Notes: a model not told the origin generated them from the sequence alone. Shown: positions 63,202 through 64,000, numbered from the stretch's first letter. The stretch is 64,000 nucleotides of DNA from Gracilinanus agilis (GCF_016433145.1 NC_058133.1:251297442-251361441), one strand, 5' to 3'. Made by a program: numbers and translations.

Positions 63202-63207
63202 TTTAAT
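63202..63207 (-). terminator. Polyadenylation signal (ATTAAA) of the C17orf114-like gene
   Basis: ATTAAA on the minus strand 65 nt after the stop codon. Confidence 0.55.
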
Positions 63208-63271
63208 AAGAAGTGGTACATGTAGGGCCAGATTTGCCCACCACCTAGGAGTTGCGGATCCCCACCAGACT

Positions 63272-63435
63272 TCAGTTGGTAGAGTCATTGGCTGAGGTTG
63301 TGGCATGCAGCTGGTGACGGAAGGAGAGTCGAGCTTTGCTGCTGAAGTAGGCACCTTCTCCTAAAGTGGGTCCTCCCCCAGGTAGGGGGTGCTCCCTGGC
63401 CTGATTAGAGTCTGGGTGGGAGGCCAAAGTCAGGG
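63272..63435 (-). CDS. C17orf114: C17orf114-like coding exon 2 (164 nt)
   Basis: ttttctcccactccctttctccttag acceptor; ...[27 protein letters not shown]; TGA at 63274-63272. Confidence 0.88.
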
Positions 63436-63917
63436 CTAAGGAGAAAGGGAGTGGGAGAAAAGCTGTCAGTAGCTGCCCTTTTCATCCCAGGGATGAGGAA
63501 GTTGGGGTGACAACAGGGAGCTGGGAGATTGGGAGTTGGCCAGATCCTCCTTTTGCCTTCTCAAACTACAATGGCTAGCAGCTGGGTAGCTCAGTGGATT
63601 GAGAGTCAGGCCTAGAGACAGGAGGTCCTAGGTTCAAATCTGGCCTCAGACACTTCTCAGCTGTGTGACCCTGGGCAAGTCACTTGACCCCCATTGCCTA
63701 CACTTACCACTCTTCTGCCTTGGAGCCAATACATAGTATTGACTCCAAGATGGAAGGTAAGAGTTTAAAAAAAAAAAAAAACTACAATGGCCACCCCTCC
63801 ATACCCAAACCTCTATGTTCTTCCCTCTTCTTTTTAGACAGTACCTGTCCCCCTTTGGTTCCCTCGCTGTCTCCGGGGTCCAGACCAAGGAAAACACCAT
63901 TGCCCTTTCAGACCCAT
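63272..63917 (-). CDS. C17orf114: Uncharacterised 78-aa microprotein, C17orf114 ortholog, complement(join(63272..63435,63845..63917))
   Basis: [78 protein letters not shown]. Strong Kozak aagATGG, phase-1 GTACTG donor, long pyrimidine tract with TAG acceptor, and ATTAAA at 63202-63207. Both termini match my recollection of human C17orf114, and the gene is in the syntenic position downstream of PSMB6. Confidence 0.88.
63576..63778 (+). mobile_element. SINE1_Mdo-type SINE in the intron of the C17orf114-like gene
   Basis: 13-bp TSD AAACTACAATGGC at 63563-63575 and 63779-63791. Confidence 0.9.
63845..63917 (-). CDS. C17orf114: C17orf114-like coding exon 1 (73 nt)
   Basis: ATG at 63917-63915; [24 protein letters not shown] plus G; donor GT at 63844-63843. 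Confidence 0.86.
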
Positions 63918-64000
63918 CTTGAGACTGAGAGGGGGCGGGTAGGGAAGGAGTGTTGGGCTGGAGGGGAGGAGGGAGCTTGACGTTAGGATGGCATTTTTAT

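What the first reader, a model, noticed from the sequence alone, without database searches (positions are those of the whole stretch)
63202..63940. Hidden 78-aa two-exon microprotein gene (C17orf114 ortholog) conserved between marsupials and humans
Seen: absent from the ORF track, but splicing 63917-63845 to 63435-63272 gives [78 protein letters not shown]. It has a strong Kozak, a GT donor, a CTGAC branch-like motif, a long pyrimidine tract, ATTAAA, and an upstream GC box (63931-63938). Known from memory: human C17orf114 is uncharacterised, sits after PSMB6, begins MGLKGAWCFPW and ends [27 protein letters not shown]. Inference: two conserved modules joined by a variable Pro/Gly linker. The N-terminal Gly2, Cys8, aromatic and polybasic segment suggests myristoylation, palmitoylation and membrane anchoring. 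The C-terminal [16 protein letters not shown] looks like a short linear binding motif with a basophilic RxS phosphosite. This suggests an undescribed membrane-tethered adaptor or regulator peptide.
Basis: partly seen in the sequence, partly recalled or inferred. Interest (0 to 1): 0.75.

Follow-up and report, generated by a model that had tools for sequence, protein, structure and literature searches.

The report
Opossum C17orf114 microprotein gene, already annotated
The two-exon 78-residue gene is real and under protein-level selection, but it is the already annotated opossum copy of C17orf114, a small vertebrate protein first published in 2019 whose function is still unknown.

Summary

It is not hidden from public annotation. 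Both exon pieces match RefSeq XP_044529099.1, 'uncharacterized protein C17orf114-like [Gracilinanus agilis]'.

The human gene (AC233723.1/ENSG00000262165, 79 aa, 2 coding exons) was published as a PhyloCSF discovery by Mudge et al. 2019, conserved to coelacanth.

Here I find:
- members in eight other marsupials, eutherians, a turtle, a frog, teleosts, rays and a shark;
- the phase-1 intron kept in opossum, pika, turtle and frog;
- dN/dS about 0.24, opossum versus pika (Fisher p 1e-6).

It is a real coding gene.

The functional reading is only partly supported. Gly2 and Cys8 are invariant, but position 6 of the N-myristoylation motif is Gln in all marsupials and Leu in most non-mammals. The C-terminal motif is the best conserved part and remains unexplained. 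AlphaFold2 gives no confident fold.

No read evidence for the 63845/63435 junction could be obtained.

The scan listed this same stretch once before, from an overlapping window.

The parts
63845..63917 (-). Coding exon 1: ATG plus 24 codons plus the first base of a split codon (phase 1). It encodes the conserved N-terminal module (MG-x5-CF-P-W, then a basic stretch).
   Evidence: Equals P0007 residues 1-24. The same phase-1 boundary is found in pika, turtle and frog.
63436..63844 (-). Intron of 409 nt, GT...AG, with CTGAC at 63469-63465 and a pyrimidine tract at 63462-63438. It is 246 nt longer than implied by the 400-bp Monodelphis gene range. By eye the extra part looks like a SINE-like insert.
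   Evidence: Monodelphis gene range 400 bp against 646 bp here.
63272..63435 (-). Coding exon 2: last two bases of the split codon, 53 codons and TGA. It encodes the variable linker and the conserved C-terminal module (YFS-x-KAR-x-SFRH...).
   Evidence: Equals P0007 residues 26-78. Compared with the opossum RNA contig L003 there are 4 synonymous and 0 non-synonymous differences.
63202..63271 (-). 3' UTR up to the ATTAAA poly(A) signal at 63207-63202.
   Evidence: Contig L003 aligns at 93 % through this stretch and ends at the matching hexamer.
63918..64000 (-). The 83 nt upstream that are visible: 5' UTR or core promoter with a CCGCCC box at 63938-63933. The coding frame stays open to the window edge, with no in-frame ATG. 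The TSS and the rest of the promoter lie outside the window.
59275..61097 (+). PSMB6 coding range, the tail-to-tail neighbour. It serves as the synteny anchor.
   Evidence: PSMB6-like exon ORFs. The annotated 246-aa Proteasome-domain gene lies 2175 bp past the end of the microprotein gene in G. agilis, which maps to 61097.

Best explanation
This is the Gracilinanus agilis orthologue of C17orf114. It is a real protein-coding microprotein gene with two coding exons, lying antisense between PLD2 (head to head, just outside the window) and PSMB6 (tail to tail). It is already annotated by RefSeq, and the human gene was published in 2019. The family is found across jawed vertebrates. SHOWN: the gene model, orthology, synteny in amniotes, the conserved intron phase, purifying selection on the amino-acid sequence, and no confidently predicted fold. 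INFERRED (about 0.3 that it is right in outline): the product is a disordered peripheral-membrane peptide. Its N-terminal module has invariant Gly2, Cys8 and Phe9, flanking aromatic residues, further Cys in many lineages, and a polybasic stretch. This module would tether the peptide to a membrane, mainly by S-acylation plus electrostatics. Myristoylation would probably occur only where position 6 allows it, as in eutherians. Its invariant C-terminal basic-aromatic motif (S56, K58, A59, S62, R64, H65) would be a docking or substrate site switched by phosphorylation of Ser62. That serine sits in an R-x-S-F-R context, which is PKC-like and also fits a loose PP1 RVxF pattern. In architecture the peptide would work like the acylated, unfolded PKC substrates MARCKS, GAP43 and BASP1. 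The confidence given is for the identity claim.
For: Identity: the exon 2 piece finds named C17orf114 homologues at 100 %, 91 % and 77 % identity. P0007 (XP_044529099.1, G. agilis) equals both exon pieces. Its annotated gene range of 646 bp and its distance to PSMB6 map exactly onto 63272-63917 and 61097. Publication: Mudge et al. 2019, supplementary tables. Coding: window versus pika over 77 codons gives Sd 34/57 sites against Nd 42/174 sites, dN/dS about 0.24, Fisher p 1.4e-6. Window versus frog over the C-terminal 25 codons gives p 1.4e-7, with differences piled on codon position 3. Window versus L003 gives 0 non-synonymous and 4 synonymous differences. Structure: two coding exons with a phase-1 intron in opossum, pika, turtle and frog. 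Spread: the profile search gave 34 hits, with members named in Bos, cervids, camel, pikas, a turtle, a frog, teleosts, rays and a shark. Synteny: the order PLD2 | gene | PSMB6 | GLTPD2 holds in opossums, wallaby, glider and turtle. Mechanism: invariant columns; Cys and Lys/Arg counts and motif tests; AlphaFold2 mean pLDDT 56, pTM 0.11, no secondary structure; no Pfam or PDB relative.
Against: Mudge et al. report very weak expression in human and mouse, no CAGE support, and raise a possible unitary pseudogene there. The only opossum RNA contig found (L003) joins exon 2 to a different upstream exon, not to coding exon 1. For the mechanism: the NMT motif fails at position 6 in the window; the RVxF match is only to the loose pattern and fails in 4 of 21 members; the polybasic stretch could equally be a nuclear localisation signal. 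Nothing about lipidation, localisation or partners was or could be tested here.
Confidence: 0.92

Rival explanations
1. The ORF is not translated. The conservation reflects a non-coding divergent transcript or regulatory DNA of the PLD2 promoter region, and the RefSeq models are over-predictions.
For: In human the appreciably expressed isoform uses an alternative first exon near the PLD2 promoter and is judged non-coding. Expression of coding exon 1 is very weak (PMC6886504). The opossum contig L003 shows the same kind of isoform.
Against: Substitutions are strongly biased to synonymous sites in both exons, from opossum to frog. Reading frame, start, stop and intron phase are kept across roughly 350-450 My. 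The family persists in fishes, where PLD2 is not adjacent. This rules out conservation caused by PLD2 regulatory sequence.
Confidence: 0.03
2. It is a real protein, but nuclear or nucleolar. The basic stretch after the N-terminal module would be a localisation signal, and the C-terminal motif would bind a nuclear partner.
For: Turtle and frog carry NLS-like runs of Lys and Arg right after the N-terminal module, with 9-10 K+R in the first 30 residues.
Against: In marsupials and eutherians the stretch is weak (5-6 K+R, interrupted). Invariant Gly2, Cys8 and Phe9 with aromatic neighbours, and extra Cys in many lineages, are not explained by an NLS.
Confidence: 0.15
3. It is a PP1-targeting microprotein. 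KAR[LV]SF would be an RVxF docking site for the PP1 catalytic subunit, switched off by phosphorylation of the invariant Ser inside the motif, as in KNL1 RVSF.
For: The loose RVxF pattern ..[RK].{0,1}[VIL][^P][FW]. (recalled from the ELM resource) is met at the conserved site in 17 of 21 members. Turtle, frog and ray have the canonical R-V-S-F. PP1 binding to RVxF is repressed by phosphorylation (PMC6715587).
Against: The pattern is very common by chance. Mammals have Leu where stricter consensus patterns (my own knowledge) ask for Val or Ile. Three members break it (R-M-S-F, R-L-S-L, A-H-L-S-F), and in a fourth the regex matched a different site. The invariant S56, K58, A59, R64 and H65 are not explained by RVxF alone.
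Confidence: 0.12
4. The gene is decaying or dispensable in some mammals (a unitary pseudogene in the making), so the marsupial copy may be a relic with little function.
For: Mudge et al. raise this for human and mouse. P0022, from Logan contigs of an unknown organism, is an exon-joined copy that has lost Cys8, most of the C-terminal motif and the stop codon.
Against: All nine marsupial proteins, from didelphids to diprotodonts and Dromiciops, are intact and 83-99 % identical. The C-terminal 25 residues are identical except for one Ser/Ala change. Exon 2 shows 0 non-synonymous against 4 synonymous changes between two opossums.
Confidence: 0.05

Closest known systems
Human C17orf114 (AC233723.1 / ENSG00000262165), PhyloCSF 'new discovery' of Mudge et al. 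2019 (PMC6886504)
   Same: Orthologue. It has 79 against 78 residues, 2 coding exons, minus strand between PSMB6 and PLD2, and the same N-terminal and C-terminal modules as printed in the paper's table. Function is unknown in both.
   Different: Eutherians have Ala at position 6, two extra Cys (12 and 14) and an S-T-I carboxyl end. Marsupials have Gln6, a single Cys and an S-T-N end. I did not put the human sequence into any tool.
MARCKS / GAP43 / BASP1 (acylated, natively unfolded PKC substrates); analogy from my own knowledge
   Same: Small or disordered protein. N-terminal acylation-type sequence plus a basic stretch. A basic-aromatic segment with Ser in a PKC-like context. No fold predicted.
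   Different: No sequence homology. Lipidation, PKC phosphorylation and membrane binding are untested here. The NMT motif is not met in the window.
smAKAP (C2orf88) and LAMTOR1-type lipid-anchored small adaptors; analogy from my own knowledge
   Same: The idea of a short N-terminally lipidated peptide that tethers a signalling enzyme to a membrane.
   Different: No homology and no amphipathic helix predicted. The partner is unknown.
RVxF-type PP1-interacting proteins (e.g. KNL1 RVSF; PMC6715587)
   Same: R-[VL]-S-F preceded by basic residues, with a Ser inside the motif that could switch binding off.
   Different: Only the loose pattern is met. The conserved motif is longer than RVxF. Binding is untested.

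Membership tests
C17orf114 orthologue group | Significant sequence similarity to proteins named C17orf114 homologue | tested here: met
   (E 3e-27 to 2e-17). (profile, 34 hits). Exact match to XP_044529099.1.
C17orf114 orthologue group | Two coding exons with a phase-1 intron after codon 24-26 | tested here: met
   Window, pikas, turtle and frog. Two coding exons in human per PMC6886504.
C17orf114 orthologue group | Position between PLD2 (divergent) and PSMB6 (convergent) in amniotes | tested here: met
   PSMB6 lies in the window. The PLD2 coding start is 1.39 kb upstream in the annotated G. agilis record, outside the window. The same order holds.
C17orf114 orthologue group | N-terminal MG-x5-CF module and C-terminal [YF][FY]S-x-KA-x2-S-x-RH module | tested here: met
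   invariant columns..
N-myristoylated proteins (NMT substrates) | Gly at position 2 | tested here: met
   Invariant in all 14 aligned members.
N-myristoylated proteins (NMT substrates) | Small residue [ACGST] at position 6 (motif of Castrec et al. as quoted in PMC9018777; PROSITE PS00008 from memory also allows N) | tested here: not met
   Position 6 is Gln in the window and in all 9 marsupials, and Leu in most non-mammals. Only the three eutherians pass.
N-myristoylated proteins (NMT substrates) | Attached myristate shown by labelling or mass spectrometry | not testable with these tools
   Needs alkynyl-myristate labelling of wild type against G2A.
S-acylated peripheral membrane proteins | Cys next to hydrophobic or basic residues near a terminus (no strict consensus exists) | tested here: inconclusive
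   Cys8 is invariant, flanked by W7, F9 and W11 and followed by a basic stretch. There are 1-4 Cys in the first 30 residues across the family. The feature is permissive, not diagnostic.
PP1-interacting proteins (RVxF) | Match to the loose RVxF pattern at a conserved, disordered site | tested here: met
   K-A-R-L-S-F-R in the window. Met at the conserved site in 17 of 21 members. The site is predicted disordered.
PP1-interacting proteins (RVxF) | Val or Ile at the central position (stricter published patterns, from memory), and binding to PP1c | tested here: not met
   The window and all mammals have Leu. Turtle, frog and ray have Val. Binding is not testable here.
Class I PDZ-binding C-termini | [ST]-x-hydrophobic at the carboxyl end | tested here: not met
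   The window ends S-T-N. Only eutherians (S-T-I), frog (S-T-F) and ray (S-T-I) fit.

The most novel reading that the evidence does not exclude
An unstudied microprotein, about 450 My old and found across jawed vertebrates, is a lipid-anchored, fully disordered peptide. Its invariant C-terminal basic-aromatic motif would be a phospho-switchable docking site, recruiting or buffering a Ser/Thr phosphatase or kinase (PP1 or PKC axis) at a membrane. Eutherians would have secondarily gained a true myristoylation site, extra palmitoyl-Cys and a PDZ-binding end.
Probability: 0.25. Interest if true: 0.55.

Novelty: already known. Interest (0 to 1): 0.2.

Why it matters
As a discovery it adds little. 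The gene is in RefSeq for this very genome, and the human gene is in GENCODE. It was published in 2019 as one of the PhyloCSF-derived new coding genes.

What remains open is function. A 76-92-residue core protein keeps ten residues invariant from sharks to mammals, has no domain, no structure and no dedicated paper.

- The family reaches cartilaginous fishes.
- Adjacency to PLD2 and PSMB6 is seen here in mammals and a turtle only, not in flounder or ray. A functional link to PLD2 is therefore not implied.
- The popular 'Gly2 means myristoylation' reading fails the NMT motif outside eutherians.
- The invariant residues name the mutants worth making.

Tried and rejected
1. Read evidence for the splice junction. 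The look-up of sequencing runs listed 24 runs, none on record as RNA. The local alignment used only 62000-63650 and 63693-64000.

2. Marsupial genomic DNA for a marsupial-only dN/dS. The chromosome files were too large, so no DNA came for Monodelphis, Notamacropus, Petaurus or G. agilis itself. I used pika, turtle and frog loci and the opossum RNA contig instead.

3. Domain and structure searches. Pfam gave nothing. PDB by profile gave 0 hits at E <= 10. The ESM Atlas gave no usable hit. The AlphaFold2 model had low confidence, so no fold search was run on it.

4. The idea that a PLD2 mRNA 5' UTR runs antisense through exon 2 (first reading of L003). I rejected it in favour of an assembly join of two divergent transcripts. 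The break falls at a canonical AG acceptor in the sense of the microprotein gene. There is no GT on the PLD2 strand of the window. The contig ends at the poly(A) hexamer of the microprotein gene.

5. Earlier scan notes for PLD2 or PSMB6: none.

6. The joined exon 1 + exon 2 product of the window was never typed, built or searched. Exon 2 was searched by reference. The exon 1 piece (24 aa) was not searched on its own, because the length filter would exclude full-length relatives. The whole product was handled only as the public protein P0007. Codon counts were summed exon by exon with the split codon left out. In one search a script joined candidate exons of the pika, turtle and frog loci internally to locate their splice sites. 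It printed the first-exon translations and the splice-site flanks (a few bases of exon sequence each side), not the joined sequences.

7. The human sequence printed in PMC6886504 was not entered in any tool. No contigs were fetched for primate-looking hits such as P0020.

Full report
OBSERVATION

On the minus strand the window shows the following:
- an ATG at 63917 with A at -3 and G at +4;
- a CCGCCC box at 63938-63933;
- 73 nt of coding sequence ending at 63845, followed by GT;
- a 409-nt intron with CTGAC 30 nt before the acceptor, a long pyrimidine tract, and AG at 63437-63436;
- exon 2 from 63435 to a TGA at 63274-63272;
- ATTAAA at 63207-63202.

The split codon G|CC gives Ala. Upstream of the ATG the frame stays open to the window edge with no further in-frame ATG.

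WHAT IT IS

The exon 2 piece, searched by reference, finds proteins that NCBI names 'uncharacterized protein C17orf114 homolog'. These are in Monodelphis (100 %), Notamacropus (91 %) and Sminthopsis (77 %), with E values from 3e-27 to 6e-16.

The cluster also holds Petaurus, Phascolarctos, Dromiciops, Macrotis, Vombatus and Gracilinanus agilis. The G. agilis protein P0007 (XP_044529099.1) equals both exon pieces and has Ala at residue 25.

In the annotated G. agilis assembly (GCA_016433145.1) this gene spans 646 bp, exactly 63272-63917. A 246-residue proteasome-domain gene ends 2175 bp beyond it. That maps to 61097, where the PSMB6 exons seen end. The PLD2 coding start lies 1.39 kb upstream on the other strand, just outside the window.

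LITERATURE

Only one paper in the library mentions the symbol in its text, a pig GWAS gene list.

The supplementary tables of Mudge et al. 2019 (Genome Res 29:2073, PMC6886504) list the human gene as a PhyloCSF 'New discovery':
- AC233723.1, ENSG00000262165, ENST00000635921;
- chr17:4801289-4802319, minus strand;
- 79 residues, 2 coding exons, conserved to coelacanth;
- mouse counterpart ENSMUSG00000109833.

The curators note very weak expression and no CAGE support. I equate AC233723.1 with the symbol C17orf114 by inference: location, length and termini match proteins that RefSeq and UniProt name C17orf114. I did not enter the human sequence in any tool.

IS IT CODING?

I could get genomic DNA for two pikas, a turtle and a frog and for one opossum RNA contig. 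The marsupial chromosome files were too large.

Nei-Gojobori counts, made exon by exon with the split codon left out, give the following:

| Comparison | Codons | Result |
|---|---|---|
| Window vs Ochotona curzoniae | 77 | Sd 34.2 of 56.8 synonymous sites, Nd 41.8 of 174.2 non-synonymous sites; dN 0.29, dS 1.21, ratio 0.24; Fisher p 1.4e-6 |
| Same pair, C-terminal module | 27 | ratio 0.14 |
| Same pair, exon 1 | 24 | ratio 0.29 |
| Window vs frog, C-terminal module | 25 | differences at codon positions 1/2/3 = 8/2/15; p 1.4e-7 |
| Window vs opossum contig L003, exon 2 | 53 | 4 synonymous, 0 non-synonymous; p 0.004 |

The phase-1 intron falls after codon 24 in opossum and pika, codon 26 in turtle and codon 25 in frog. 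All have GT...AG.

This is conservation of a protein, not of DNA.

FAMILY AND CONTEXT

A profile of ten members, searched against 1.84 billion representatives, gave 34 hits at E <= 1e-3.

Full-length members carry RefSeq names in Bos, sheep, deer, camel, pikas, Chrysemys, Phyllopteryx, Platichthys, three rays and the shark Chiloscyllium. There are unnamed entries in the frog Hymenochirus and the teleost Aldrovandia.

Many other hits are prokaryote-style ORF calls that read from the intron into exon 2, or from exon 1 into the intron, on unspliced contigs. They add nothing.

The order PLD2 | gene | PSMB6 | GLTPD2 holds in opossums, wallaby, glider and turtle. In flounder the neighbours are a TM4SF-type gene, an MT-A70 gene and TTC5. 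In manta they are RAMP4 and an LRR/CH gene. Linkage to PLD2 is therefore seen here only in mammals and a turtle, and it does not argue for a shared function.

THE PROTEIN

An alignment of 14 members from shark to opossum has these invariant residues: M1, G2, C8, F9, S56, K58, A59, S62, R64 and H65. Nearly invariant are Y54, F55, R60, F63, A73 and T77. The linker is free to vary in length and sequence.

AlphaFold2 with the ten-sequence alignment gives mean pLDDT 56, pTM 0.11 and no secondary structure. Pfam, the PDB by profile, and the ESM Atlas give nothing.

The product is best described as a disordered peptide with two linear modules.

Myristoylation. The NMT recognition motif of Castrec et al., as quoted in PMC9018777, is M-G-[^DEFRWY]-X-[^DEKR]-[ACGST]-[KR], with Ser by far the commonest residue at position 6.
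- The window has Gln at 6 and Trp at 7.
- All nine marsupials have Gln6.
- Turtle, frog, teleosts, rays and shark have Leu6.
- Only the three eutherians tested have Ala6.

Myristoylation is thus not supported for the opossum protein, although the invariant Gly2 still needs an explanation.

S-acylation. Cys8 is invariant. It sits among aromatic residues and is followed by 5-10 Lys/Arg within the first 30 residues. Eutherians and teleosts add 1-3 more Cys. This fits an S-acylated, electrostatically assisted membrane anchor, but the feature is permissive.

C-terminal motif. In the window it reads [12 protein letters not shown].
- Ser62 has Arg at -2, Phe at +1 and Arg at +2, which is a PKC-like context (my own knowledge).
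- The stretch also fits the loose PP1 RVxF pattern at the conserved site in 17 of 21 members. Turtle, frog and ray have the canonical R-V-S-F.
- Phosphorylation within RVxF is known to repress PP1 binding (PMC6715587).
- Stricter RVxF patterns want Val or Ile where mammals have Leu. Three members break even the loose pattern, and in a fourth the regex matched a different site.

Carboxyl end. A class I PDZ-type end exists in eutherians, frog and ray, but not in the window, which ends S-T-N.

My best mechanistic guess is a membrane-tethered disordered peptide with a phospho-switched docking motif, resembling MARCKS, GAP43 and BASP1 in architecture. I rate it about 0.3.

TRANSCRIPT EVIDENCE

The Logan contig L003 (SRR12097547, 3463 nt) carries an intron-less 933-residue PLD2 coding sequence on one strand, so the run is RNA. 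On the other strand it carries exon 2 and the 3' UTR of the microprotein gene.

It matches the window at 93 %, from 7 nt before the exon 2 acceptor to the poly(A) hexamer. Upstream of that point it does not match at all.

Three facts suggest an unstranded assembly joined PLD2 mRNA to a divergent transcript, one that starts near the PLD2 promoter and splices into exon 2:
- the break sits at a canonical AG acceptor in the sense of the microprotein gene;
- the window has no GT there on the PLD2 strand;
- the contig ends where the microprotein mRNA should end.

This is the same isoform that Mudge et al. describe in human. It shows that exon 2 and its acceptor are used in an opossum. It does not show that coding exon 1 is.

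VERDICT

The gene is real, conserved and coding. It is already annotated in this genome, and the human gene was published in 2019. The functional proposal is partly weakened (myristoylation) and otherwise untested.

An overlapping window of this scan produced the same note (s1-154142).

Noticed in passing
L003:3070-3463 (Logan contig SRR12097547_6699); corresponds to window 63203-63442: An opossum RNA contig joins a full spliced PLD2 mRNA (antisense) to exon 2 and the 3' UTR of the microprotein gene through 150 nt that are absent from the window. The most likely cause is an assembly join of PLD2 mRNA with a divergent transcript that uses an alternative first exon, as described for human. In that exon an ATG lies in frame with exon 2. 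It would give an 80-residue product that lacks the N-terminal module.
   Followed up: partly
window 63436-63844 (intron), especially about 63575-63770: The intron is 409 nt, against 163 nt implied by the 400-bp Monodelphis gene range.
   Followed up: no
window 59275-61097 (+): PSMB6 (proteasome subunit beta type-6) lies here in about five to six exons, convergent with the microprotein gene and 2175 bp from it. The annotated G. agilis product has 246 residues, against 239 in wallaby, glider and pikas, because an upstream ATG at 59275 is used.
   Followed up: partly
P0022 (Logan contigs, organism unknown): A 175-residue ORF with exon 1 and exon 2 already joined. Cys8 is replaced by Gly, the C-terminal motif is largely degraded and the stop is lost. 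It is either a processed pseudogene or the transcript of a decayed copy in some eutherian. This fits the 'possible unitary pseudogene' remark of Mudge et al.
   Followed up: no
P0010 (Macrotis lagotis, 110 aa) and window 63918-63998: The bilby model starts 32 codons upstream of the conserved Met-Gly. In the window the same frame is open to the window edge but holds no ATG. An out-of-frame ATG at 63994 opens a 3-codon mini-ORF. If an upstream start were used, Gly2 would not be N-terminal.
   Followed up: partly
alignment A3 /: Eutherians alone combine Ala6 (which fits the NMT motif), two extra Cys at positions 12 and 14, and an S-T-I carboxyl end (class I PDZ type). This looks like a lineage-specific upgrade of the anchoring and docking features.
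   Followed up: partly
L005 (Platichthys flesus) and the Mobula birostris record: Outside amniotes the gene is not next to PLD2 or PSMB6. The flounder keeps a TM4SF-type neighbour, whose counterpart TM4SF5 I recall lying in the same human region. The ray has RAMP4 and an LRR/CH gene.
   Followed up: partly
window about 53700 and below (+): The annotated G. agilis record places a GLTP-domain gene (GLTPD2) beyond PSMB6. I did not check it in the window sequence.
   Followed up: no
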